From positions 1 to 64,000 of IMG/VR virus record IMGVR_UViG_3300020084_000003: 64,000 bases of DNA. One strand, written 5' to 3'. The position numbers and the translations under genes were made by a program. Shown here piece by piece: positions 6,446-26,921 of this stretch; positions within the stretch are counted from its first letter, which is position 1, and each line of letters opens with the position of its first letter. The notes below the pieces were generated by a model that saw only the letters and a program-made list of their open reading frames with translations, did not search any database and was not told the origin of the DNA.

Positions 6446-7765
6446 TTATAGTCCTTTCAAATCAGATAGATATTGCTCTTCAACCGTTGTATCTTTCCAG
6501 AATTTAAGAGTTTCACTAGATGCAAGTATCTCGGAAGCTAGTTCTGAAACCATCTCAGATGTAAGGCTGATAATGTTTGTTCTTAGAAGCTTGTCAATAT
6601 CTTCTTCCTTAACACCCTTGACTTCTTTCATGATTTGTGCAGCTACATCATCCTTTGTCTTGTTCTTGAACTTGATCTTATCATCCAAAACTGCCATGAT
6701 GAAATACATCTTGACTTTCTTCCAACGCATTTCTTCTGAAATTTCAGAAACCTTGGTATCAATGCGCTTTTGAAGGATGGTCTTCTTATACTCACAGAAA
6801 TCTTTAATCAATTCCTTAACATCATCATAGACCTTTAGCTTGCCTTCATGATTGATTACAGTGATGTTTTCAGTCTCAGTTGTTTGAAGTTTCAATTCTT
6901 TGATGATTCGCTCATCACTCCAACCACCATTCGCCTGCTTCAACTTGACTTCAAAACGAAAACCTGATTTATCACACTTATCAACATATGACATGATTAC
7001 GCCATCGTCTTCAAGCTTGTTCAATACGTTAACAAATTTCTCACGGTCGTATCCATAAGGAACCTCTGTCACCGTAAACTCTGTCTTGTTTTTTCTAACA
7101 ATCTTTCCAGTAATGTATAGTCGCCCATCATCACCAAATTCTGCCGTTCCGTTAAATTGCGGAAACTTGACCCTCGGCGTAGTCTTGATCTTTCCAGTTT
7201 TGATATATTCAGCACATGCTTTCGCCACTTCTTTTTCATCGCGAGGAAGAATGTTTGTGGCAAACCCTGTAGCAATACCTTTTGCTCCATTAATCAAAAC
7301 CATAGGAATGATAGGGACATAGAACGTAGGAGGCAAATGCTCTGGATCATAATGGACCGGAGATAGATCAAAGTCAGTGTAATATTTGTAGAAATTTTCA
7401 TGCAATCTAGTGTAAGTATAGCGCGGCGCACCAGCCTCTTGAACAAGACGGGAACCAAAGCTACCTTCACTCTCAATAATAACTACATTGTTATACCAAT
7501 CTGCTGCCATTAGCTGACCGGCACCGGCACATGAAGTCTCACCATGATTGTATCCATATTTCGATACAACACCAGAAATTGCACTTACTTTCTCAAATAT
7601 TTTCTTTGAGTTTACAATTGATGAATATAGATAAAACCTTTGAACCGGTTTCAAACCATCAATCATGTTGGGAATTGCGCGAGATTCAACTGTATAAAGA
7701 GCGAAGTTTTTCCACTCTTTATTAGCCAATTCTACAATATCATATATTTTATCTGCACTTGTCAT
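6446..7765 (-). CDS. gp52: DNA topoisomerase II medium subunit
   Basis: RAIPNMIDGLKPVQR, YNHGE, catalytic AGAPRYT, NGAKGIATG. Confidence 0.97.
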   Translation of the reverse strand: MTSADKIYDIVELANKEWKNFALYTVESRAIPNMIDGLKPVQRFYLYSSIVNSKKIFEKVSAISGVVSKYGYNHGETSCAGAGQLMAADWYNNVVIIESEGSFGSRLVQEAGAPRYTYTRLHENFYKYYTDFDLSPVHYDPEHLPPTFYVPIIPMVLINGAKGIATGFATNILPRDEKEVAKACAEYIKTGKIKTTPRVKFPQFNGTAEFGDDGRLYITGKIVRKNKTEFTVTEVPYGYDREKFVNVLNKLEDDGVIMSYVDKCDKSGFRFEVKLKQANGGWSDERIIKELKLQTTETENITVINHEGKLKVYDDVKELIKDFCEYKKTILQKRIDTKVSEISEEMRWKKVKMYFIMAVLDDKIKFKNKTKDDVAAQIMKEVKGVKEEDIDKLLRTNIISLTSEMVSELASEILASSETLKFWKDTTVEEQYLSDLKGL

Positions 7766-9615
7766 TTAAACATAAACTCCTTGCGAACATCTGCATTATT
7801 ACCAAACATCATCTCTAGAAGAGATGGATCACTCACCGCAAGCGTGTCTAGTGTAGGCTTGTTAATCACCACATCATACTCCTTCTCTCGCAAAGACGCA
7901 AGACCTTTGATATAACGATGAGTATATCCTTTTGAATCAGTTTTAAACTCATTTGCGCTATCATAGGAATAGAACCACTTGGTATCTTTCCCATTTGTAG
8001 AAATCATGATTGGCGTTCTAGTCAGCTTTAATCTACCATCTTTCACCATACCCGGCCAGAATTTATAAAAGAAACCTAGAAGCAAGGTTGCAATCTTCTC
8101 ACCATCATGGTCTGCGTCTGACAAAATAGCCACATTCTGGTATGTCATATTTTTATATGAATTGGGGTCATTAATATTCAAACCAAGGATATTGATTAGG
8201 TCGCTAAACTCTTTGTTTGCCAGAACCTTTGCAGGGGTTTCTGTCCAAGCATTAAGAGAAACACCGCGAAGCGGGAAGAACCCTGTAGTATCTGGATTTC
8301 TGATCTTAATGCCAAAGCCTAGAGCCGAATCACCCTCTACCAAGAATAGAGTTGCATTTTTTCCACTTGCAGCAATGTGCTTGGCTACTTTTACCTTTTT
8401 AAGTTTCTTTTGTGCAATAGCTGCTTCACGTGCAGCTTCCGCTTCTTTTTTGTTAAGTTGAGCTTCAACAATGGGACCAATAACGTCTTCCATGTCCATG
8501 ATCTTCTTTGCGATATACTTGAAGTCGTATTTAAAAGACTTCTGGAAGTGGTCACGCACCTGTGTCATAGTATTGGTCAGGCGTTCTTTGGTTTGAGAAT
8601 CATACTTTGGATTGACGAAATTTCTTGCGAAAATTACAAAGGTGATGCCATTCTTGATAGTCGATTTGGATACTTCCACTTTATACTTGCGCTTAATCAT
8701 GGCAGTCATTTCATCAATAGTGCCATTAATGACATAATCGACGTATGCGCCACCAAGACGAGTATTCACACCGTTGATGAAGCAATTTTGACGGAAACCA
8801 TCTTCTGAGCCAGTAATGAGGAATGAAACATCATCAGTTGATGAGACAAATTGACTTCCGCCTTCTGGACCAAATTTTTCAGCATAAGCTTTGAATGTGG
8901 TGACACCATCGAAGAAATCTTTTTTACCGTTGAAAGTAAACTTTATTTCAGGGAAACACATTGAAAGGGAAATTAGTCGATCTTTAAGAAGACGAATGGT
9001 ATCAAAATCATTAATTGAATTGCATTCCATAAGATCATAGTCAGGAATAAATGAAACCTGTGTTCCGTTTCCTGCTTTGGTTGATTTTGTAGTTTTAATA
9101 TTAAGGCCACCATCAGAACATTTTACTGTCACCGACTGACCATCTCTCCAAGTTTTTCCTACAAAAGTTTTCGACATGAAGTTTGTGCATGAGCTACCTA
9201 CACCGTTAGCACCGATTGTTGTTCTTTCGTCATCAAAAGACGTGCCAGCATTAACGCGGGTCCATGCTGCTTCTGGACGCAATAGTTTTACGCCATTAGA
9301 ATCTACAACTTCATCTTGTGGAATACCGCGACCATTATCTGTAATGGTTATCTCTTCGCCATCAATGGAAACATCAATCTTATTCGCAAATTTAAATTGT
9401 GTTCTAATTGCTTCATCGACAGAGTTATCTAAAATTTCTGATATGATTTTCAGAACTGCTGGAACATATGTTACCTTCTCGTATTTTCCTAGAACAAAAC
9501 CTTCAATTGTTTCTTTGGAAACAGAACCTACATACATTCCCGGTCTTTTCCTCACATGCTCACGTGGGGATAAGATTTCGAATTTTTCTTTACTCATTAG
9601 AGTTTCCTTCTTCAT
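7762..9615 (-). CDS. gp39: DNA topoisomerase II large subunit (gp39+gp60 fused)
   Basis: HVRKRPGMYVGS, EILDNSVDE, GANGVGS ATP lid, TOPRIM EGDSA and DADHDG, YIKGLAS. Confidence 0.97.
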   Translation of the reverse strand: MKKETLMSKEKFEILSPREHVRKRPGMYVGSVSKETIEGFVLGKYEKVTYVPAVLKIISEILDNSVDEAIRTQFKFANKIDVSIDGEEITITDNGRGIPQDEVVDSNGVKLLRPEAAWTRVNAGTSFDDERTTIGANGVGSSCTNFMSKTFVGKTWRDGQSVTVKCSDGGLNIKTTKSTKAGNGTQVSFIPDYDLMECNSINDFDTIRLLKDRLISLSMCFPEIKFTFNGKKDFFDGVTTFKAYAEKFGPEGGSQFVSSTDDVSFLITGSEDGFRQNCFINGVNTRLGGAYVDYVINGTIDEMTAMIKRKYKVEVSKSTIKNGITFVIFARNFVNPKYDSQTKERLTNTMTQVRDHFQKSFKYDFKYIAKKIMDMEDVIGPIVEAQLNKKEAEAAREAAIAQKKLKKVKVAKHIAASGKNATLFLVEGDSALGFGIKIRNPDTTGFFPLRGVSLNAWTETPAKVLANKEFSDLINILGLNINDPNSYKNMTYQNVAILSDADHDGEKIATLLLGFFYKFWPGMVKDGRLKLTRTPIMISTNGKDTKWFYSYDSANEFKTDSKGYTHRYIKGLASLREKEYDVVINKPTLDTLAVSDPSLLEMMFGNNADVRKEFMFK

Positions 9616-9645
9616 ATTTTACTTGTGATTCTCAAAACAGCCTTC

Positions 9646-9674
9646 ATCATACACGATGTGCATGATGTTGTCAA
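9646..9674 (-). promoter_or_regulatory. sigma70-type promoter of the topoisomerase operon
   Basis: TTGACA-17-TATGAT on the minus strand. Confidence 0.7.
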
Positions 9675-9700
9675 CCATGTTATAACAGTAATAAATGAAA

Positions 9701-9900
9701 AAGAATCATAAGATTCTATAACGACTCTATAGAATCTAACAGAATCAAATAATTATGACGGGCGAAGCCCGAAAACGCGAAGCGTTTTTCATTACTTTAC
9801 AGAATCTTACGACTCTATAAGACTCATTAAGAATCATAAGATTCTATACATAATACTAGACTCTATAGTAATATTAGTATTATGATTCTTTATGATTCTT
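9701..9900. repeat. iteron-like direct/inverted repeats with tandem GCGAAGC mini-hairpins; candidate replication origin
   Basis: AAGAATCATAAGATTCTATA at 9701 and 9829; ACGACTCTATA at 9721 and 9809; inverted TATGATTCTT twice at 9881-9900; hairpins 9759-9771 and 9772-9788. Confidence 0.65.
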
Positions 9901-9913
9901 AGGGATTATAAAT

Positions 9914-10008
9914 GTTATAACGTAAATCGAGCCAAGAGTCAAGAAGAAAATTGAACTTTGTCGATTTATTTTTTTCTTCTTGACTCTTACCCTATTTTAG
10001 AGTAGATT
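9914..10008. promoter_or_regulatory. divergent sigma70 promoter pair built from a 17-bp inverted repeat
   Basis: minus strand TTGACT(9942-9937)-17-TATAAC; plus strand TTGACT(9980)-17-TAGATT; IR AAGAGTCAAGAAGAAAA. Confidence 0.6.
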
Positions 10009-10036
10009 ATAATAACCATAGTGACAGTGATTCGCA

Positions 10037-11554
10037 CTATAGGTCTACAGTGTAGACTTTAACCTCAAAACCTTCTTCTGCATATATCTCAAGTCTTTTA
10101 GCAAAATGCTGGTATGAATAGTTACCATTGTTTGTGCTGCTTGTCAATAGGTCGCCTATGTCATAAAGGACAGTATCATCTGATCCATTACCTTTTCTAA
10201 GTAATCTACCTATAGACTGCAATGTTTTAACTTCACCTTTGGTTCCAGATGCAAATATGGCATTGTCAATTCTTTTAATTGAAACACCAGTAGACGTGGT
10301 TCCTGATGAAGCAACAATATCATATACTTTTTCTGGATTAGATTCTATCTGCTGTCTCATTTCTTCTCTAACGTCAACATCTACTTTGCCATGAATAAAG
10401 AATACTACTCTTCCTTCTCTTTCAAACATTTCAGCAAGTATTTTACCATGAGTGTCTACATCATCAAACAAAATCAAATTGTTCTTCCCATCTAATGATG
10501 CAACAAGATTTTTAATGAACTCATTTCTAGAATCACTAGCCTTCAAAAATGCTTTCTCCAAAGGATATTTCATCTTACCTTTTTTGCTATTATGAATCTT
10601 GTTGTCATTCTCTAGCTGTTTCAATGCTTCTCTAAATCTTTTCTTTTCATCTTTTGTATGATTTAACAGTATTGCCTTGATTTTGAATTTTGCAGTTACG
10701 TTATTGTCAATCATCTCTTTAGTAGAAATGTATTTGCGTATCTTGCCAAACATGCCTTCAAGGTTCAGTCTATGCACTTTTGATTCGGAAGATATTGTTC
10801 CAGTAAATCCATGTCTGAAATAACATTCTGGCAAAGAGTCCATTATTGTTGTGAGTGATTTAGAGTCGAACGTATGCGCTTCATCTCCCAACACACATCC
10901 AAATTCAGAAAAGAACTTGCTGTCCTTTTTGACCAAAGTATGCCATGTTGAAACAACTATTTTTGTGCCGGGATCATCATTAACGCCATCGCCCATCATC
11001 CCTATGAATTCTCTTGGGCAATTATATGAAACAAAGTCGCTGACCATTTGTTTAGTCAACTGTATTCTAGGAACTACAATCAAAACTCTTACATCATAAT
11101 TTATGATATAAAACATTGCGATGATATATTGAATTAAAGATTTACCGGAACTGGTCGGACTGAGGTTCAAGCTTCTGCCATCTTTTATCGCGTCGGTAAT
11201 ATATTTCGCTTGATAGTCGTGCAGAGTGTATGGTATCTTTAGCTTGGTAGCGAGATTCGTGATATCTTCCTCGGTTACAGCGTCACCGTAAAACACATCC
11301 TTGTGTATGTCAATAGTGTATTCACGTTCATCCGCAAACTTTTTTAATAAATTTATGAGGCCAACATACAAGCTCTGGTCTTTGGTAGAGAATATACGTA
11401 TATAACCATCCCAGATGCGATTGCGGTATTTTGGGTGGTGTTGGTAGTTTTTTGGTCTGAAAGTGAAATAATCAGAAATTTCCTGTAAAATGCCTCTATC
11501 AGCTTCTACATGAAGATGTATAGCATTTTTGATAGTTACCTTAATATCAGCCAT
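10037..11554 (-). CDS. uvsW: UvsW SF2 DNA helicase
   Basis: YFTF, SPTSSGKS, GDEAH, GFTGT, TLQSIGRLLR motifs. Confidence 0.96.
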   Translation of the reverse strand: MADIKVTIKNAIHLHVEADRGILQEISDYFTFRPKNYQHHPKYRNRIWDGYIRIFSTKDQSLYVGLINLLKKFADEREYTIDIHKDVFYGDAVTEEDITNLATKLKIPYTLHDYQAKYITDAIKDGRSLNLSPTSSGKSLIQYIIAMFYIINYDVRVLIVVPRIQLTKQMVSDFVSYNCPREFIGMMGDGVNDDPGTKIVVSTWHTLVKKDSKFFSEFGCVLGDEAHTFDSKSLTTIMDSLPECYFRHGFTGTISSESKVHRLNLEGMFGKIRKYISTKEMIDNNVTAKFKIKAILLNHTKDEKKRFREALKQLENDNKIHNSKKGKMKYPLEKAFLKASDSRNEFIKNLVASLDGKNNLILFDDVDTHGKILAEMFEREGRVVFFIHGKVDVDVREEMRQQIESNPEKVYDIVASSGTTSTGVSIKRIDNAIFASGTKGEVKTLQSIGRLLRKGNGSDDTVLYDIGDLLTSSTNNGNYSYQHFAKRLEIYAEEGFEVKVYTVDL

Positions 11555-12413
11555 TCAATATCCAATCTCTACATTTCTTAGTTTTGTTTGTTAACAGGTT
11601 GCTTACACTTGTTACTGGTATATTAGTATTTTTAATAAATTCGTGTCTAGTGCATTCCATTGTTTCTTTTGTTTTTGTGTTAAAAAACTTGTATATTTTA
11701 ACATCTTTGTTAAAGTTTTTAGTTCTATCAAAATCATCTATTGTAGATGCTAGTTTCCAACCTTTGTAGCTTTTCTCTTTGCCATTTAAAAGGTTTGTTA
11801 ATGAAGCAACATTTCCTGATAGTTTATTAAATTCACTTCTAGTGAGGGACATTTTTTCACCATTAGGTGAAATGAAATCATATTTATTTTTATCTAATTT
11901 ATAGTGATGGTCGTTTATTCTAAGTTTATAATTCAAGTAATCCTCAGTTATTGTGTCATTTTCTTCCATAATGAACCAGTTTTTATAGCTTCTTATGATA
12001 TTTAGCTTAACTTGACTAAAACCAGTTTTACTATTATATTTCTTAGACATGTCGTAAATCGTCGCATATTCCACTCTTCCATCTGCATTACCCCATTTAT
12101 ATATTGTAGGATCATACATAGGATGCGTTTTACCAGAATATTTCGGTGGATTGGCATTCAAGCACAAGTTCATACATAAACTATTTTGATAGTTATTTAG
12201 TATATGAAATTCTTCTCTAACTACATTTTCTTCGTCCGATCCACAATATTCTATGACTTCTTTAGTTAAGTTTGTCTTATTTTCATGAGTTTGTATCCAT
12301 TTACCGCTACCTAAATATGGGTCTTCAAGAGCATCTTCATATCTAGATGTAGTTCTTTTTCCAATATAAAATCTGCCATCTATGTCTGTGACTTTATAAA
12401 CATAGTGAATCAT
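11547..12413 (-). mobile_element. free-standing GIY-YIG (Seg-like) homing endonuclease
   Basis: YVYKVT..FYIGKR..YLGSG N-terminus with repeated C-terminal DNA-binding modules; inserted between uvsY and uvsW. Confidence 0.8.
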
Positions 12414-12862
12414 CAGGCTACTCCTGACACAAATTTTTCGTATTCTATGATGTTTTTTATATCGAATGATCTTTGGTTTAGCTTTTTAACTATGTCTTCT
12501 AGGTATCTTATGCAATTATCGGTTTCCGCAATAGTTTCGATAAACTTTATTATGTCTGGGTCTGCGTCCATCACTTTTGATACTTCTGATTTAACTAGAC
12601 GTTTGCCATAAACAGGCCAGCCAAGTTCTTTCATTTTTGGTAGGTCCATTTCACCAGAGTAATAATCTATTTTGTTGGATTTTAATTCTGCATATAGAGA
12701 ATTTAGTTTATTCTTCTTAGACACCATCTTGACCAACATGCTGTAGTATTTCTGGTGCAAACTAAGCTGATTTCTGGAATGTTTTGATAGGTCGGGGTCT
12801 GTTCTAAAATCTTCGGAATCTTTGGACCACTCTTCATTTATAGTGTCAATTGTAATAGCCAT
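12413..12862 (-). CDS. uvsY: UvsY recombination mediator
   Basis: WSKDS, LHQKYY, YYSGE, DADPDI, RSFDIKNIIEYEKF; start placed at MAITID. Confidence 0.88.
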   Translation of the reverse strand: MAITIDTINEEWSKDSEDFRTDPDLSKHSRNQLSLHQKYYSMLVKMVSKKNKLNSLYAELKSNKIDYYSGEMDLPKMKELGWPVYGKRLVKSEVSKVMDADPDIIKFIETIAETDNCIRYLEDIVKKLNQRSFDIKNIIEYEKFVSGVA

Positions 12863-12875
12863 ATTATATCCTTTA

Positions 12876-13361
12876 TTAATATCTTTCAATAGTGTAATAA
12901 TTATAGTTAAATGTAGCATCTACTATTAAAGGCTTAGTGTCTGTAAGAGCATTATCAAAGTTAAGATCGCTCAATCCAGACGGGAAAGCATCAAAGAATG
13001 TTACATTTATAGCAGGGTTTTTGCTGCTGTTAAGTATAATAACACTTATATCAGATTTTAGATCATATTTCAAGTCATTTTTCTTGTATTGTGAATGATC
13101 TTGTGGGAAAGCTATGTGATGCATCCAATCAAATAATTCCATATAGTTTTCCATTTTCTCATCAACAAGAAAAGACCATGTTAGCTCATGATAATCCAAC
13201 TTATCATAAGGCACTCTTAGTGGGTTCAATGGTGTTGGCTGAGTTATTGCGTTTGCAGAAATTGATGGAATATTTGTCTTCTGCAAAGTGAATGTTGTAT
13301 TGGGCAATCTCTTGACACTTCCAATGAAATTGTTGGGCGTCATGTAATTTATGAAGGGCAT
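12876..13361 (-). CDS. gp3: tail completion / tube terminator
   Basis: NYMTPNNF..RLPN..NIPSIS..FLVDEKMENYMELFDW..DAFPSGLS; start placed at MPFIN. Confidence 0.88.
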   Translation of the reverse strand: MPFINYMTPNNFIGSVKRLPNTTFTLQKTNIPSISANAITQPTPLNPLRVPYDKLDYHELTWSFLVDEKMENYMELFDWMHHIAFPQDHSQYKKNDLKYDLKSDISVIILNSSKNPAINVTFFDAFPSGLSDLNFDNALTDTKPLIVDATFNYNYYTIERY

Positions 13362-23441: not shown

Positions 23442-23519
23442 GGTGATGTAGCTCAGTTGGTTAGCAGCGCACCCCTGATAAGGGTGAGGTCGGTGGTTCG
23501 AATCCACCCATCACTACCA
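23442..23519 (+). tRNA. tRNA-Ile(GAU)
   Basis: acceptor GGTGATG/CATCACT, anticodon arm CACCC-CTGATAA-GGGTG, TTCGAAT loop, encoded CCA. Confidence 0.95.
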
Positions 23520-23572
23520 AAAATTATATAATGGAGACATTTATGTGGTTCAAAAAATTGAAGGAGTTTATT

Positions 23573-23926
23573 ATGGGAACTGTTCGCATAAATGATGATG
23601 TTTATGAAGATGTGACCACTGTTAATTTTAATGGTAACAGAACTATTATTATAAATGGTAAAGATGTTTCTGGATCATATAAAACATTTCCACAAATCAA
23701 TGTGACTATTGAAGGTGATGTGAAAATCGGTGTAGTTGATGTTAATACACTTACTGTAAATGGAAGTCTTACAACGGGTAAAAATGTTGACTGTAATGAT
23801 ATTACCGTTTATGGTGATATGACTGTGAATGGTGATGTGGATTGTAATACGTTGCGTGTAGAAAAAGACTTGACATGCGGTGACGTTGATGCTAACACTG
23901 TTAAAGCAGGAAAAATGAATAAGTAG
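23573..23926 (+). CDS. beta-helical repeat protein (bactofilin-like repeats)
   Basis: V.G.V.C..I.V.G repeats; SD AAGGAG before MGTVRI. Confidence 0.6.
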   Translation: MGTVRINDDVYEDVTTVNFNGNRTIIINGKDVSGSYKTFPQINVTIEGDVKIGVVDVNTLTVNGSLTTGKNVDCNDITVYGDMTVNGDVDCNTLRVEKDLTCGDVDANTVKAGKMNK

Positions 23927-23947
23927 GAGATGGTGGTGATTAAATAT

Positions 23948-24032
23948 GGGCGGGATGGCACAGTGGAGGGCCACCAGACTGTAAATCTGGCGCGGTAACG
24001 CATGGTAGGTTCGAACCCTACCCCGCTCACCA
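23948..24032 (+). tRNA. tRNA-Tyr(GUA)
   Basis: acceptor GGGCGGG/CCCGCTC, CCAGA-CTGTAAA-TCTGG, long variable arm, encoded CCA. Confidence 0.93.
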
Positions 24033-24052
24033 ATTATTAAAGGATTTATATT

Positions 24053-24271
24053 ATGCAAATGGAAAATAAACACCCTTTTACGCAAACGGTAAATGTGCCG
24101 CAGCACATTCTTGATAAAGTAAATGCTGCAAATCCTGATAAACCAAAAATGACCGAGCTACGTCTTGTATTTGAACCCGGAACAGAAGTAACGGATGAGT
24201 TGATTGAAAAAGGCGCAATGAGCTTTCACGATTGGACTAAAAACGCTAAACTTGTTTCGGGAGTAGATTAA
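24053..24271 (+). CDS. hypothetical protein
   Basis: 72-aa ORF with SD AAGGA. Confidence 0.7.
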   Translation: MQMENKHPFTQTVNVPQHILDKVNAANPDKPKMTELRLVFEPGTEVTDELIEKGAMSFHDWTKNAKLVSGVD

Positions 24272-24489
24272 TGGAAAAATATGCAAAAAAGTCATTGCGT
24301 TTTGTCGTGAAACTATTAGTGTCTCCTTTTGTTTTATTTGGATGGGGAATGATTTTCTTGTTTCGTTATATTGAATTATTTTACGAGTGGTTATTTGAAG
24401 TAAAACAGTCTGACTTCACGAAACAATTTAATAAAGAATATCATGAAGAATCAATGCTTAAATTTAGGCGTTTCTTCACTCAGATTTAA
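24271..24489 (+). CDS. hypothetical membrane protein
   Basis: 72 aa with one hydrophobic segment; TAATG coupling. Confidence 0.65.
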   Translation: MEKYAKKSLRFVVKLLVSPFVLFGWGMIFLFRYIELFYEWLFEVKQSDFTKQFNKEYHEESMLKFRRFFTQI

Positions 24490-24499
24490 GGGGGTTAAT

Positions 24500-24709
24500 A
24501 TGGATATTAAAGAAATGGTTGCCAATGGTAAACGTGTAAAATTTACTAGGTATTTTGACGGTAATCTCTGGTATGTGACAGAAAACGGCTTTGAGTTTCC
24601 TGTTCCTGTTAGCGACATTGGGAATGCTACATTTGCGGCGGAAGACAAAGCTATGTTATTCATGCGCTATATCAGGAAGCATATTGCCACGGTAACTAAT
24701 AATGGCTAA
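24500..24709 (+). CDS. conserved phage hypothetical protein
   Basis: LWYVTENGFEFPVPVSDIGNATF.AEDKAMLFMRYIRK; SD GGGG. Confidence 0.75.
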   Translation: MDIKEMVANGKRVKFTRYFDGNLWYVTENGFEFPVPVSDIGNATFAAEDKAMLFMRYIRKHIATVTNNG

Positions 24710-24878
24710 AGACTATTTTAATCAAAAATTTGACCAATTTTTAGGTCATAAGCTTAGAATGGTAGAAAGAGATATGCATGGCAGATTAGTGTTGACATTC
24801 GAAGGTGACGATGATATGGTTAGGTCAGTTGCAGTGGCGGCGACCCCTATGGGCGGAATCAATATCAAAGAGGTATAA
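24702..24878 (+). CDS. hypothetical protein (58 aa, not in ORF track)
   Basis: ATG GCT AAA..GTA TAA; fills the gap between neighbours. Confidence 0.55.
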   Translation: MAKDYFNQKFDQFLGHKLRMVERDMHGRLVLTFEGDDDMVRSVAVAATPMGGINIKEV

Positions 24879-24879
24879 C

Positions 24880-25194
24880 ATGTCTTTTATTTTCAACTTC
24901 CAGAAGAACCGTGCGAGAAAGAAAGGATGGAAGAAATTCTTCTATATGGGAAAACTTCATGATGTTTATACTCGCGAAGAACTGCTAGAACTCGAAAGTA
25001 AAAGATTGAAAGAATGTCAAGACGAAGCAGATGGCCTTGTTGTAGCAAGAATGATACGGGAATTTCAATCTGATTTTAGCACAATATATCCAGAACACAT
25101 CCATATTGGTCTTGGTGCTGTTGGCCCTCTACAGACTTTTTTGGGTCTAGCTATTAAAAATGGACACATCACGATAAAAGATGAGGATGATTGA
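24880..25194 (+). CDS. hypothetical protein
   Basis: start placed at MSFIF after SD GAGGT. Confidence 0.6.
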   Translation: MSFIFNFQKNRARKKGWKKFFYMGKLHDVYTREELLELESKRLKECQDEADGLVVARMIREFQSDFSTIYPEHIHIGLGAVGPLQTFLGLAIKNGHITIKDEDD

Positions 25195-25588
25195 TATGTT
25201 ACATATTACACAAGAAGTAATGTCTGAGGCGATGCTGAAAGTCCATTTAGGAGAAGGTCTGGTTGTGCATAGATTTAATGCACCGGATCATGGTCATCAT
25301 CATGACCATCCTTGGCCCTTCAAAAGCACTATTATTCGCGGCGGATATGTAGAAGAAGTTATGAACCGCGATGGAAGTATTGAGACAGTGGAGAGGCTAC
25401 CGGGTCAGCAATTTCTTATAGAACCCATGCACATTCACAGAATAATTCATCTGTTTGAGCCTGTAGTTTGGACTTGCATTGATTTGCAAGGTGAGAAGGT
25501 GCAGGAACCGGGATTTTATGAAGTGCGAGATGGGCAAGTTTGGTCCCGTAGATGGAACGAAAGAGAATTTAAACCGCATACTTTTTGA
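25181..25588 (+). CDS. cupin-fold protein
   Basis: HHHDHPWPF.STIIRGGYVEE and HIHRI cupin metal motifs. Confidence 0.7.
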   Translation: MRMIDMLHITQEVMSEAMLKVHLGEGLVVHRFNAPDHGHHHDHPWPFKSTIIRGGYVEEVMNRDGSIETVERLPGQQFLIEPMHIHRIIHLFEPVVWTCIDLQGEKVQEPGFYEVRDGQVWSRRWNEREFKPHTF

Positions 25589-25599
25589 AAAGGTCTTAT

Positions 25600-25926
25600 A
25601 TGATGAAACTACTAACAGCAGGTTACGGGGCAGGCAATGGCCCCGGAATGACCCTACTACATAAACCTTTTGTCAAAGTAGACCCAAGTATGGAAGATGT
25701 TCTGTGGAAGTATTCTTGTCATATAACTTTTGCAAGGAAAATAAGAATTTGTTTGGAAAACTCTGGTAGATACGATTGTTGGGTGCAACCCGGATGGATA
25801 TATCATCAGTATCATGAGTGTAAAAAAGATTTAGCTGATATTGGGATAAAAATGCTGATTACATCTGTCCCTGAAAGAGACAAATATGTTATTGACAAAG
25901 GAAAAGTTATAGTAGAGAGTGTGTGA
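25600..25926 (+). CDS. hypothetical protein
   Basis: ORF in operon spacing. Confidence 0.55.
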   Translation: MMKLLTAGYGAGNGPGMTLLHKPFVKVDPSMEDVLWKYSCHITFARKIRICLENSGRYDCWVQPGWIYHQYHECKKDLADIGIKMLITSVPERDKYVIDKGKVIVESV

Positions 25927-25928
25927 AG

Positions 25929-26096
25929 ATGGATGGTTATGAAATAGTGCAATGCGCTGTAAAATATTATGTCATATATAAAGACGAGTATAACTGTATA
26001 GGTCAGGTAGGACCATTTGTATCATACGCAGAAGCAGAAGAGAACAGTCTTGATTATGAAAACGCCATTGTTTCAAGGCAGTTAGAGGAAATATGA
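25929..26096 (+). CDS. hypothetical protein (55 aa, not in ORF track)
   Basis: MDGYEIVQ..QLEEI; ATGA overlap with the next ORF. Confidence 0.5.
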   Translation: MDGYEIVQCAVKYYVIYKDEYNCIGQVGPFVSYAEAEENSLDYENAIVSRQLEEI

Positions 26097-26362
26097 CTGA
26101 GGTATTGGTAGTCTATTACGAGCATAATGGTTCTAGTGCAGGAATGCATATCTTGGACCGTATGCCAGAAAATGAAGAAGAATTGAATTATATTTTTGAT
26201 GAGATACTATGCATTCCAAAAGTATATAAAGATTTGTTGACTAAAGGATCAACTAACTTCGAAAGAATGAAACAAATGGGCTATTGGCAGTTTAGTTGTG
26301 ATGAAAATTGGGATGATGCTCAAATAGTGTATTTCAGTATGAAAAAGGTTAATGAGTTATGA
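26093..26362 (+). CDS. hypothetical protein
   Basis: 89-aa ORF with SD GAGG. Confidence 0.65.
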   Translation: MTEVLVVYYEHNGSSAGMHILDRMPENEEELNYIFDEILCIPKVYKDLLTKGSTNFERMKQMGYWQFSCDENWDDAQIVYFSMKKVNEL

Positions 26363-26562
26363 CTGATGAAGAACAACAAAAATTTTTGGATATGGTAAGG
26401 AAAACAATGCCAGATCAAATTGCTAAAGATATTTTAGAAGTAAATGTTGTCGATCCTAATATAATGAAAGAACTTTATGAAAATAGTAAAAGTGAAGAAG
26501 AATTAGTTAAAGAAGGTTTTAAACCTGTTTCTGGTATGAAATTGGTTTGGACAAAAGAATAA
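26359..26562 (+). CDS. hypothetical protein
   Basis: 67-aa ORF with ATGA overlap. Confidence 0.65.
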   Translation: MTDEEQQKFLDMVRKTMPDQIAKDILEVNVVDPNIMKELYENSKSEEELVKEGFKPVSGMKLVWTKE

Positions 26563-26579
26563 AAAGTGTGTTTAATTGA

Positions 26580-26717
26580 GGACGAGAGGGCGCTGTTGGT
26601 TGGTTCCATCCGGCTTTGGACCGAAGAGTATGAAGGCTCTGTGAAGTTCAAACCTTCTAGGTCAAGATTAACCGGAGACTTAATGTCACGTGGGTTCGAT
26701 TCCCACCGGGATTACCA
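26580..26717 (+). ncRNA. tRNA-like RNA with a second tRNA-like module nested in the anticodon loop
   Basis: D-arm shared with tRNA-Lys(CUU); TCCGG/CCGGA stem around a 51-nt insert carrying a TTCAAAC T-loop; variable arm; GTGGG-TTCGATT-CCCAC; ACCA end; acceptor stem poorly paired. Confidence 0.7.
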
Positions 26718-26734
26718 TTAAATACACTTAATAT

Positions 26735-26810
26735 GGCCCCATCGTCTAGTGGTCTAGGACGCTGCCCTTTCAAGGCAGAAACACGGATTCGAATTCCGTT
26801 GGGGCTACCA
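26735..26810 (+). tRNA. tRNA-Glu(UUC)
   Basis: GGCCCCA/TGGGGCT, CTGCC-CTTTCAA-GGCAG, encoded CCA. Confidence 0.95.
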
Positions 26811-26833
26811 ATAAAAATAGTCTACTTTATAGT

Positions 26834-26921
26834 GGACCGAAGGGCGCTGTTGGTTTGCTCCATCTGTCTCTTAAACAGACGCCGAAAGGCTTCGCCGGTT
26901 CAATTCCGGCTCGGTTCACCA
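26834..26921 (+). tRNA. atypical tRNA with CUU (Lys) anticodon and long variable arm
   Basis: GGACCGA/TCGGTTC, TCTGT-CTCTTAA-ACAGA, GCC-GAAA-GGC arm, GCCGG-TTCAATT-CCGGC, ACCA. Confidence 0.82.

What the first reader, a model, noticed from the sequence alone, without database searches (positions are those of the whole stretch)
9701..9942. Origin-like architecture: iterons, twin GCGAAGC mini-hairpins and a promoter firing into them
Seen: a gene-free AT-rich stretch with a perfect 20-bp direct repeat (9701, 9829), ACGACTCTATA twice, inverted TATGATTCTT copies, two abutting hairpins both closed on GCGAAGC (9762, 9777), and a TTGACT-17-TATAAC promoter pointing leftward into the array. Established: d(GCGAAGC) is an unusually stable ssDNA mini-hairpin, and T4 origins use a promoter-made R-loop over an unwinding element. 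Inference: a replication origin that combines both features.
Basis: partly seen in the sequence, partly recalled or inferred. Interest (0 to 1): 0.6.

Follow-up and report, generated by a model that had tools for sequence, protein, structure and literature searches.

The report
Three-copy GANTC-array and mini-hairpin module
The stretch is real and is one of three copies, kept in related lake phages, of a module of GANTC word arrays around two small GAA-looped DNA hairpins fed by a promoter; it is most likely a replication-start site of a giant T4-like phage, but that is unproven.

Summary
The picture changes in three ways.

1. The "iterons" are arrays of the 5-bp palindrome GANTC. The middle base is free and the sites sit 9-11 bp apart. 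There are 17 sites in 421 bp, against about 2 in shuffles.

2. The locus is not unique. The 284,776-bp T4-like genome (lake-water metagenome) has exactly three such loci, at 9.7, 119.1 and 156.4 kb. Only these three carry stem-extended GCGAAGC hairpins, always on the + strand. Each also has a leftward sigma-70-type promoter that reads through the array into the hairpins.

3. All three loci are kept at syntenic places in uncultured relatives whose flanking proteins are 60-82% identical. Stems change by compensatory substitutions, GANTC sites turn over, and hairpin 1 keeps a C-GAA-G triloop in all 10 loci examined.

The hairpins are unlike this genome's ordinary terminators, which have long GC stems and UUCG or GNRA loops.

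The best reading, at about 0.4, is a family of replication-initiation zones. They would combine traits of T4 oriF/G (promoter plus AT-rich tract), oriE (phased repeats) and ssDNA mini-hairpin signals.

The main rival is a transcription control and insulator module read by an unknown GANTC-binding or GANTC-methylating factor. No origin activity could be tested.

The parts
9616..10036 (.). Module A: the whole gene-free region between the gp39 homologue (topoisomerase II large subunit) and uvsW
   Evidence: ORF list and Pfam. 69.6% A+T. 17 GANTC sites against 2.06 +/- 1.34 in shuffles.
9646..9674 (-). The gp39 gene's own promoter, TTGACA-17-TATGAT. It lies downstream (left) of the hairpins.
   Evidence: Consensus scan, 11 of 12 matches. 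The -35 and -10 blocks are conserved in relative L020.
9627..9631 (.). Single GATTC in the gp39 leader, at about +8 to +12 of that promoter
   Evidence: TTGTGATTC is invariant between the window and L020.
9703..9746 (.). Left GANTC array: 5 sites at 9703, 9712, 9723, 9732 and 9742, spaced 9-11 bp
9701..9720 (+). First copy of the perfect 20-bp direct repeat (holds GAATC-N4-GATTC)
9759..9771 (+). Hairpin 1, CGGGC-GAA-GCCCG (GCGAAGC at 9762). The + strand carries the GAA triloop.
   Evidence: C-GAA-G is kept in all 10 homologous loci, with compensatory stem changes.
9772..9788 (+). Hairpin 2, AAAACGC-GAA-GCGTTTT (GCGAAGC at 9777), followed by TTTTTC
9802..9844 (.). Right GANTC array: 5 sites at 9802, 9811, 9821, 9831 and 9840, spaced 9-10 bp
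9829..9848 (+). Second copy of the 20-bp direct repeat
9849..9913 (.). Most A/T-rich tract, with three more GANTC sites (9859, 9884, 9894). It is the first ~60 nt transcribed from the leftward promoter.
   Evidence: The tract 9797-9907 is 74.8% A+T. The 100-bp window at 9826 is 79% A+T, the 99.85th percentile of the genome.
9914..9942 (-). Leftward promoter TTGACT-17-TATAAC, which reads into the array and hairpins
   Evidence: Read. The same arrangement occurs in L020 (TTGACA-18-TATAAG) and in L036 (TTGACA-17-TATAAG). It is not listed by the scan because the last base of the -10 is not T.
9934..9988 (.). Perfect 17-bp inverted repeat, with 21 nt between the arms, that holds the -35 boxes of two divergent promoters
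   Evidence: I3.
9980..10008 (+). Rightward promoter TTGACT-17-TAGATT, antisense to the 3' end of uvsW
   Evidence: The -35 block CTTGACTCTT is invariant in L020 and present in L036.
7762..9615 (-). Left flanking gene: topoisomerase II large subunit (gp39 homologue)
   Evidence: Pfam DNA_gyraseB, HATPase_c and Toprim. 50% identical to KVP40-group gp39.
10037..11554 (-). Right flanking gene: UvsW helicase
   Evidence: Pfam UvsW_N, ResIII and Helicase_C.

Best explanation
Locus 9616-10036 is one of three paralogous cis-acting DNA modules. The others lie at 119,049-119,341 and 156,357-156,892 of the same genome. They most likely serve as replication-initiation zones of this 285-kb T4-like phage.

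Shown:
- Each module has a core of two abutting hairpins whose + strand carries C-GAA-G triloops.
- GANTC sites in helical phase flank the core.
- An A/T-rich tract and a sigma-70-type promoter on the right transcribe about 80-150 nt of non-coding DNA leftward, across the array and into the hairpins.
- The next gene has its own promoter beyond the hairpins.

Inferred mechanism:
- An unknown factor reads GANTC. It could be a binding protein, or a methylation writer/reader pair.
- This factor coats the phased arrays and, together with early transcription, opens the A/T-rich tract, as at T4 oriF/oriG and oriE.
- Once strands separate, the + strand snaps into the unusually stable d(C-GAA-G) mini-hairpins.
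- The hairpins hold the bubble open and/or mark the entry point for helicase loading or priming, as GNA-loop hairpins do at G4 oric, RSF1010 ssiA and N4 early promoters.
For: 1. Only three loci exist, and they share one plan. The three highest GANTC clusters (15, 10 and 12 sites per 300 bp, against a mean of 0.9) coincide exactly with the only stem-extended GCGAAGC hairpins in the genome (2+2+3 copies, all on the + strand).

2. Conservation holds while the sequence turns over.
- Locus A: L020 (UvsW 82% identical) has 18 GANTC sites and twin GCGAAGC, with a GGGC/GCCC to GCGC/GCGC compensatory change. L022 (63%) has GGCC-GAA-GGCC plus GC-GTTA-GC. L036 (60%) has TTCGAAC-GAA-GTTCGAA plus TTTGAAAAT-GAA-ATTTTCAAA.
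- Locus B: L026 and L027 keep the hairpins and carry 12 and 9 GANTC sites.
- Locus C: L030 and L034 keep the module.

3. The conserved loops are those of known DNA mini-hairpins, GCGNAGC and GCGNNAGC. These are far more stable as DNA than as RNA and occur at phage and plasmid priming or initiation sites (PMC13037366).

4. At locus C, standard nearest-neighbour folding gives no significant hairpin (z about 0). Ordinary Watson-Crick stability therefore does not explain why the GCGAAGC motif is kept there.

5. The hairpins differ from the genome's ordinary terminators.

6. GANTC sites sit 9-11 or about 19-20 bp apart, on one face of the helix, and the middle base occurs at background frequencies.

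7. The A/T-rich tract lies downstream of the promoter.

8. Locus A sits beside topoisomerase II, uvsW and uvsY. T4 oriF lies at uvsY. T4 has at least 5 origins, and oriE has phased repeats plus an early promoter (PMC3016281). Locus B lies at a switch of transcription direction and GC skew.
Against: - There is no functional evidence. Public runs hold this phage only as low-depth DNA contigs, with no raw reads and no RNA.
- No initiator gene or GANTC reader was identified. No CcrM-type (PF01555) or Dam-type (PF02086) methyltransferase was found.
- The stable GAA form lies on the template strand of the leftward promoter, so it is not the strand displaced in an oriF-type R-loop.
- GC skew simply follows transcription direction, and locus C lies at no skew switch.
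- A/T richness is moderate, 1.5-2.5 sd above other intergenic regions.
- The hairpins always have the same orientation relative to transcription, and hairpin 2 of locus A scores as a + strand terminator, so an RNA-level role is not excluded.
- GANTC sites overlap core promoter elements at loci B and C, as operators would.
- In the 60% relative the tight GANTC arrays are mostly gone.
- T4's own iterons have never been tied to origin function.
Confidence: 0.4

Rival explanations
1. Transcription control and insulator module. The GANTC arrays are operators, or methylation-sensitive sites, for an unknown phage or host factor that tunes the divergent early promoters. The twin hairpins act as a bidirectional stop or attenuator that separates a short early transcript from the next gene, which has its own promoter.
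For: - Each locus has divergent or convergent sigma-70-type promoters.
- GANTC sites lie directly after the -10 and in the spacer of the leftward promoter at locus B and its relatives. They also lie around the -35, spacer and -10 of the small-gene promoter at locus C.
- A GATTC at about +8 is conserved in the gp39 leader.
- The downstream genes have their own promoters: P39 at A, a T4-type late TATAAATA at B, and TTGACC-17-CATTAT at C.
- Hairpin 2 of A scores as a terminator.
- The gene under locus B is a methyltransferase-fold protein with FxGxG and NPPW motifs.
- Another promoter family at 128-135 kb carries GAATC/GATTC words in its leader.
Against: - The stems are short and U-runs are weak at B and C.
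- The genome's real terminators look different.
- A plain terminator does not explain GAA loops being kept while stems are replaced.
- Array position relative to promoters differs among the three loci, whereas position relative to the hairpins is constant.
- No DNA-binding protein was found nearby.
Confidence: 0.3
2. Small non-coding RNA genes. The leftward promoter makes an RNA of about 90-150 nt that carries repeated GANUC words and ends at the two hairpins. At locus C there would also be an RNA of about 50 nt on the + strand. Such an RNA would act as a regulator or a protein sponge.
For: - Promoter-to-hairpin distances are about 80-150 nt at all loci, with no conserved reading frame. The short peptides across the hairpins differ in frame among loci (and the reading).
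- Hairpin orientation relative to transcription is fixed.
Against: - The repeated word is palindromic and occurs in both orientations with a free middle base, as expected for duplex DNA recognition rather than an RNA motif.
- The RNA hairpins would have UUC triloops with poor U-tails.
- There is no Rfam match.
- The transcribed sequence between promoter and hairpins turns over freely apart from GANTC.
Confidence: 0.12
3. Structure-specific DNA processing site. Supercoil-driven extrusion of the twin hairpins gives a cruciform that is cut or bound by a phage enzyme such as a junction resolvase, helicase loader or terminase. This would create recombination hot spots, recombination-dependent replication starts, or packaging entry points.
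For: - Both strands can fold.
- GNA triloops are known to favour extrusion and to occur at initiation sites.
- T4 origins coincide with recombination hot spots and late replication is recombination-driven.
- A RuvC-fold gene lies about 1.6 kb from locus B.
Against: This is entirely inferential. T4-type packaging needs no specific site. Nothing in the data points to DNA ends at these loci (one search shows no piled-up ends, but it rests on contigs only).
Confidence: 0.08

Closest known systems
T4 oriF (uvsY) and oriG: promoter plus downstream DNA-unwinding element, R-loop primed
   Same: - A promoter reads into an A/T-rich non-coding tract.
- There are several such sites per genome.
- Locus A lies in the uvsW-uvsY neighbourhood.
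- A UvsW helicase, which removes origin R-loops in T4, is encoded next door.
   Different: - The promoters here are of early sigma-70 type, not MotA-dependent middle promoters.
- T4 origins share no common motif, whereas these three share GANTC arrays and GAA hairpins.
- The stable hairpin strand is the template strand, not the displaced strand.
[quoted passage not shown]
   Same: - Evenly spaced short repeats lie next to an early-type promoter.
- The repeats are kept in syntenic regions of relatives.
- The role of the repeats is unproven in T4 too.
   Different: - The repeat core here is only the 5-bp palindrome GANTC, in either orientation.
- There are three copies per genome.
- Twin hairpins sit at the centre.
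- No repEA/repEB-like genes were identified.
DNA mini-hairpin signals d(GCGNAGC) and d(GCGNNAGC): G4 oric, RSF1010 ssiA (CCGAAGG), N4 early promoters (GCGGAGC, GAA or GGA loops)
   Same: - The heptamers and octamers are the same: GCGAAGC here, and CCGAAGG and GCGTTAGC in relative L022.
- The stems are 3-8 bp with a 3-nt purine-rich loop closed by C-G.
- They sit on one defined strand.
   Different: - The known cases act on single-stranded templates or need a dedicated enzyme (DnaG, RepB', N4 virion RNA polymerase).
- This is a double-stranded T4-like genome, and no such enzyme was found. The PF00940 search was blank, but its control also rang nowhere.
Methylation-site clusters at origins and pac sites, such as GATC at E. 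coli oriC and P1, and GANTC at Caulobacter Cori (cited from general knowledge)
   Same: A dense cluster of a short palindromic word identical to the CcrM/HinfI target, with a free middle base and helical phasing.
   Different: - No CcrM-family or Dam-family enzyme is encoded in the phage.
- The host is unknown, and its promoters look like the TTGACA/TATAAT type.
- The methyltransferase-fold gene at locus B has unknown specificity and substrate.
PeSL promoter-terminator cassettes of T4-like phages
   Same: A composite of an early promoter and a stem-loop, repeated within a T4-like genome.
   Different: - PeSLs are many copies in hyperplastic regions.
- They have one GC-rich stem-loop (A3-4G3-loop-C3T3-4 in the KVP40 group) placed upstream of the promoter, and they mark indels.
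- Here there are three copies at conserved syntenic sites, twin short hairpins with GAA loops downstream of the promoter, and GANTC arrays.

Membership tests
T4 oriF/oriG-type R-loop origin | A promoter whose transcript enters the origin | tested here: met
   Leftward TTGACT-17-TATAAC at 9942-9914. TTGACA-16-TATAAT at 119262-119235 and at 156660-156633. The arrangement is conserved in relatives. The promoter class is sigma-70 early type, not MotA middle type.
T4 oriF/oriG-type R-loop origin | An easily unwound element directly downstream of the promoter | tested here: inconclusive
   The tracts are 68-75% A+T. The best 100-bp windows reach the 97.6th to 99.85th percentile. No superhelical-destabilisation calculation or experiment was done.
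T4 oriF/oriG-type R-loop origin | A persistent R-loop and replication start in infected cells | not testable with these tools
   Only DNA contigs from lake metagenomes are available.
Iteron-type origin (plasmid, lambda, T4 oriE) | Three or more evenly spaced copies of a 12-22-bp repeat | tested here: not met
   Only GANTC carries information and the flanks are merely A/T-rich. The 20-bp repeat has two copies. The spacing itself is regular, at 9-11 bp.
Iteron-type origin (plasmid, lambda, T4 oriE) | A cognate initiator gene at or near the repeats | tested here: not met
   The neighbours are topoisomerase II, UvsW, a methyltransferase-fold protein, PnuC/NadR-like proteins, RNA ligase and small unknown proteins. 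None resembles a Rep or O protein.
Intrinsic (rho-independent) terminator | A GC-rich stem followed directly by a U-run on the transcribed strand | tested here: inconclusive
   Hairpin 2 of locus A qualifies on the + strand. On the minus strand, and at loci B and C, stems have 2-4 G-C pairs and 3-4 U. The genome's typical terminators have 8-12-bp stems with UUCG or GNRA loops.
PeSL cassette | A single stem-loop upstream of an early promoter, in many copies in variable regions and flanking indels | tested here: not met
   Three copies, syntenic in relatives, with hairpins downstream of the promoter.
N4-type hairpin promoter | A template-strand hairpin with a 5-7-bp stem and a 3-nt loop with a central purine | tested here: met
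   Stems of 3-8 bp with a GAA loop, on the template strand of leftward transcription.
N4-type hairpin promoter | A hairpin-specific single-subunit RNA polymerase encoded by the phage | tested here: inconclusive
   There is no PF00940 match, but the control search found the family in no control genome.
CcrM-type GANTC methylation cluster | The recognised word is GANTC with any middle base | tested here: met
   In 45 sites the middle base frequencies equal background (A .31, C .19, G .19, T .31).
CcrM-type GANTC methylation cluster | A GANTC-specific methyltransferase present in phage or host | tested here: inconclusive
   The phage has no PF01555 match above cut-off and no PF02086 match. It encodes a 181-aa gamma-like methyltransferase fold of unknown specificity next to locus B. 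The host is unknown.

The most novel reading that the evidence does not exclude
A sequence-defined, multi-copy origin class for a lineage of giant T4-like freshwater phages. Phased GANTC arrays would be read by a still unknown binding or methylation-sensing factor, and would flank template-strand d(C-GAA-G) mini-hairpins. After transcription-assisted opening, the hairpins would serve as the helicase-loading or priming signal. That would bring a device known from single-stranded phages, RSF1010 and N4 into a double-stranded T4-type replicon. It would also give T4-like phages their first shared origin motif.
Probability: 0.2. Interest if true: 0.8.

Novelty: new variant of a known kind. Interest (0 to 1): 0.55.

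Why it matters
T4, the model for this phage group, has at least five origins that share no motif, and the role of its oriE iterons is still undefined. Here a distant T4-like lineage has three loci built on one recognisable, conserved plan.

If these loci are origins, they would be a tractable, sequence-defined system. It could address how T4-type phages choose initiation sites, what role ssDNA mini-hairpins play in a duplex genome, and whether a GANTC reader or methylation times initiation.

If they are regulatory instead, they define a new operator word and an unusual hairpin insulator for an uncultured phage group. Either way the module is a useful marker for annotating such genomes.

Tried and rejected
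- **DNA similarity to known phages:** none. KVP40, the nearest cultured group (50% gp39 identity), has different synteny and no triple GANTC array.
- **IMG/VR twin-hairpin scan:** the search with the TTTCAT tail found only this same phage, as an identical 21-kb fragment, plus unrelated chance hits.
- **JGI metagenome scan:** None had more than 4 GANTC sites within +/-200 bp, so it found no new relatives. It does serve as a control showing that twin GCGAAGC alone does not bring GANTC clusters.
- **Sequencing runs:** only lake-water DNA runs kept as contigs, at low depth, with no variants, ends or RNA. This gives no information on origin activity, and the absence of signal is not evidence.
- **Whole records behind relatives' loci:** these could not be searched.
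- **Rfam:** no family at the three loci.
- **Coding reading:** rejected. The 30-aa ORF at 9745-9837 (minus) and the short frames across the hairpins are not conserved in frame among the loci.
- **tRNA explanation for the minor GANTC clusters at 128-149 kb:** rejected. The tRNA genes lie at 23-27 and 254-283 kb. Those clusters belong to a different promoter cassette.
- **Candidate GANTC binder:** the 72-aa protein downstream of locus C has no family and no DNA-binding features.
- **Methyltransferase-fold protein P0121:** the fold is confirmed, but substrate (DNA or RNA) and specificity remain unresolved.
- **GC skew:** it tracks transcription and does not discriminate between the readings.

Full report
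**What the window is**

The window is the first 64 kb of a single 284,776-bp virus record (38.2% G+C), which CheckV rates complete. The finding is flanked by the topoisomerase II large-subunit gene (gp39 homologue, 7762-9615, minus) and its partner gp52 (6446-7765, minus). On the other side lie UvsW (10037-11554, minus) and UvsY (12413-12919, minus). So this is a T4-like phage.

The nearest cultured relatives are KVP40-group vibriophages, at only about 50% gp39 identity. No phage record shares DNA with the region. Public runs that hold the sequence are lake-water metagenomes.

**Observation**

This covers the perfect 20-mer at 9701 and 9829, ACGACTCTATA at 9721 and 9809, and tandem TATGATTCTT at 9881 and 9891 with inverted copies inside the 20-mers. 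It also covers the two abutting hairpins, CGGGC-GAA-GCCCG (9759-9771) and AAAACGC-GAA-GCGTTTT (9772-9788), and TTGACT-17-TATAAC on the minus strand (9942-9914).

The region 9616-10036 is gene-free and 69.6% A+T.

**What the repeats really are**

Marking the sequence shows that all the repeated words share one core, GANTC. There are five sites at 9703-9746 and five at 9802-9844, spaced 9-11 bp and flanking the hairpins. Seven more sites complete the region.

A profile of 45 sites, from the three loci of this genome and one relative, carries information only at G, A, T and C. The middle base has exactly background frequencies, and the flanks are merely A/T-rich.

The locus holds 17 sites in 421 bp, against 2.06 +/- 1.34 (maximum 7) in 1000 dinucleotide-preserving shuffles.

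**The locus is one of three**

Genome-wide, GANTC is not over-represented: 861 sites against about 990 expected. Three windows nevertheless stand far out. They lie at 9.7 kb (15 per 300 bp), 119.1 kb (10) and 156.4 kb (12), against a mean of 0.9.

GANTC pairs spaced 9-11 bp are almost confined to these loci, 14 pairs against 4 elsewhere. GCGAAGC with an extended stem also occurs only there, as 2, 2 and 3 copies, and always on the + strand.

The three cores are alignable: (T)GA-hairpin 1-hairpin 2-TTTCAT-GANTC.

Each locus also has a sigma-70-type promoter on its right side that points left into the array and hairpins.
- Locus B: TTGACA-16-TATAAT at 119262-119235.
- Locus C: TTGACA-16-TATAAT at 156660-156633.

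A second promoter points the other way in each case.
- Locus A: 9980-10008, antisense to uvsW.
- Locus B: 119278-119305, toward pnuC and a nadR-like gene.
- Locus C: TTGACA-17-TATTCT further to the right.

The next gene to the left has its own promoter beyond the hairpins.
- Locus A: P39, TTGACA-17-TATGAT, 9674-9646.
- Locus B: a T4-type late promoter, TATAAATA at 119088-119081. This word is strongly positional in the genome, with 25 of 51 copies lying 5-60 nt before a called start.
- Locus C: TTGACC-17-CATTAT at 156410-156382.

The right-hand promoter therefore makes a non-coding transcript of roughly 80-150 nt across the GANTC array and up to the hairpins. Locus C additionally has a + strand promoter (156425-156453) that converges on the hairpins.

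**Conservation**

Protein searches found uncultured relatives, and their contigs were fetched.

*Locus A*
- In L020 (UvsW 82% identical) the intergenic region is again 420 bp. It has 18 GANTC sites at partly different positions and twin GCGAAGC hairpins whose stems changed by compensation, from GGGC/GCCC to GCGC/GCGC.
- In L022 (63%) the hairpins are GGCC-GAA-GGCC and CATTTTGC-GTTA-GCAAAATG.
- In L036 and L037 (60%) they are TTCGAAC-GAA-GTTCGAA and TTTGAAAAT-GAA-ATTTTCAAA. There the tight GANTC arrays are mostly replaced by very A/T-rich repeats.

*Locus B*
- In L026 and L027 (neighbouring protein 76% and 62% identical) the twin hairpins are unchanged. There are 12 and 9 GANTC sites with different middle bases and positions. 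The promoter and the late TATAAATA are kept.
- L029 (65%, 27% G+C) lacks the module.

*Locus C*
- In L030 and L034 (RNA ligase 74% and 71% identical) hairpin 1 keeps C-GAA-G and hairpin 2 has AAA or TCT loops. A third hairpin is GCGAAGC or ACGAAGT, and 10-13 GANTC sites remain.

Over the nine aligned loci, hairpin 1 is C-GAA-G in 9 of 9 with stems of 3-7 bp and varying sequence. Hairpin 2 keeps its GC closing pairs in 9 of 9 and a GAA loop in 6 of 9. The 60% relative, which was not in that alignment, also keeps C-GAA-G in hairpin 1. Its hairpin 2 keeps the GAA loop, but with a T-A closing pair in an all-A/T stem.

Selection therefore acts on the hairpins, on the GAA loop, and on the presence of GANTC rather than its position.

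**Why not ordinary terminators**

The genome's hairpin-plus-T-run sites have 8-12-bp GC-rich stems with UUCG, GNRA or AATT loops. The module hairpins have 2-4 G-C pairs, triloops and weak U-runs, except hairpin 2 of locus A on the + strand.

At locus C, nearest-neighbour folding, as DNA or as RNA, gives no significant structure (z about 0). Ordinary pairing energy therefore does not explain why GCGAAGC is conserved there.

The literature does offer an explanation. d(GCGNAGC) and d(GCGNNAGC) are exceptionally stable DNA mini-hairpins whose RNA versions are much weaker. They occur at the G4 primase site, in RSF1010 ssiA (CCGAAGG) and in N4 early promoters, which have GAA or GGA loops (PMC13037366). 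The variant loops seen in relative L022, CCGAAGG and GCGTTAGC, belong to the same class.

Leftward transcription uses the + strand as template. The very stable GAA hairpins are therefore on the template strand, not on the strand that a T4 oriF-type R-loop would displace.

**Candidate readers of GANTC**

The phage has no CcrM-family (PF01555) match above cut-off and no Dam-family (PF02086) match.

The gene directly left of locus B (genome 118,503-119,048, 181 aa) has the motifs EPFCGRG and NPPW and matches PHROG 799, "DNA methyltransferase" (E 5e-27). It folds with pLDDT 91 into a class I methyltransferase. The nearest structures are gamma-class N6-adenine DNA methyltransferases (M.BseCI, M.TaqI, CamA), but rRNA methyltransferases also match. 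Its target is unknown.

The small protein downstream of locus C is conserved but uninformative.

**Interpretation**

The module is a conserved cis-element family. I favour replication-initiation zones, at 0.4.
- T4 itself has at least five origins.
- oriF and oriG are a promoter plus an unwinding element.
- oriE has evenly spaced short repeats and an early promoter.
- Origins tend to lie near switches of transcription direction (PMC3016281).

Here locus A lies next to topoisomerase II, uvsW and uvsY. Locus B lies at a switch of direction and skew. The tracts downstream of the promoters are among the most A/T-rich in the genome. The conserved loop type also points to a role for single-stranded DNA.

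The main rival, at 0.3, is a transcription control and insulator module. GANTC sites overlap core promoter elements at B and C. The hairpins sit between an early transcript and separately promoted genes. Their orientation relative to transcription is fixed.

Lesser rivals are small RNA genes and cruciform processing sites.

Nothing here demonstrates origin activity. The sequencing runs hold only low-depth contigs.

**Comparison with known systems**

The module is not a PeSL cassette, not a classical long-iteron origin, and not found in KVP40. It is best described as a new variant that combines traits of T4 oriE, T4 oriF/G and GNA mini-hairpin initiation signals with a GANTC cluster like those at methylation-controlled origins.

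Noticed in passing
Outside the window: genome 128,300-135,100 (locus L038:1300-8100): At least 7 copies, in both orientations, of a promoter cassette TTGACA-16-GATATT followed by a conserved leader CTGAAATAGAATC..GAATC..GATTC. At 128,335/128,399 and 131,301/131,365 two copies face each other as a 19-bp inverted repeat. The region is richer in G+C (44-48%), has short ORFs on both strands, and has no Rfam match.
   Followed up: partly
window 11547-12413 (-): A 288-aa ORF between uvsW and uvsY has no Pfam or PHROG match. It is absent from the relatives L020, L021, L022 and L036, where uvsY directly precedes uvsW. It is a likely recent insertion.
   Followed up: partly
Outside the window: genome 118,503-119,048 (-), protein P0121: A 181-aa class I methyltransferase with motifs EPFCGRG and NPPW, and a T4-type late promoter 34-41 nt before its start. 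It has no Pfam family, more than 250 homologues in metagenomes, and unknown specificity.
   Followed up: partly
Locus L022:11640-12100 (relative with UvsW 63% identical): About 450 bp of extra, G+C-richer sequence sits between the twin hairpins and the gp39 promoter. It has no long ORF and no Rfam match.
   Followed up: partly
window 9934-9988: A perfect 17-bp inverted repeat whose arms each contain TTGACT, so two divergent promoters share mirror-image -35 regions. Weaker versions exist in relatives.
   Followed up: partly
window 23442-26921 and genome 253,852-282,660: There are 32 tRNA genes: 4 on the + strand inside the window and 28 on the minus strand near the other end of the record.
   Followed up: no
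Outside the window: genome 119,342-121,049 (+): A PnuC-type nicotinamide mononucleotide transporter and a NadR-like AAA_28/cytidylyltransferase gene lie right of locus B. The pair is syntenic in relatives L026 and L027, and suggests an NAD salvage pair like that of KVP40-group phages.
   Followed up: no
Loci L021, L031 and L032 (relatives): Several metagenome contigs of relatives end within or just beside the modules: 174 bp after uvsW in L021, and inside locus C in L032. The repeats may break assemblies, or this may be chance at low depth.
   Followed up: no
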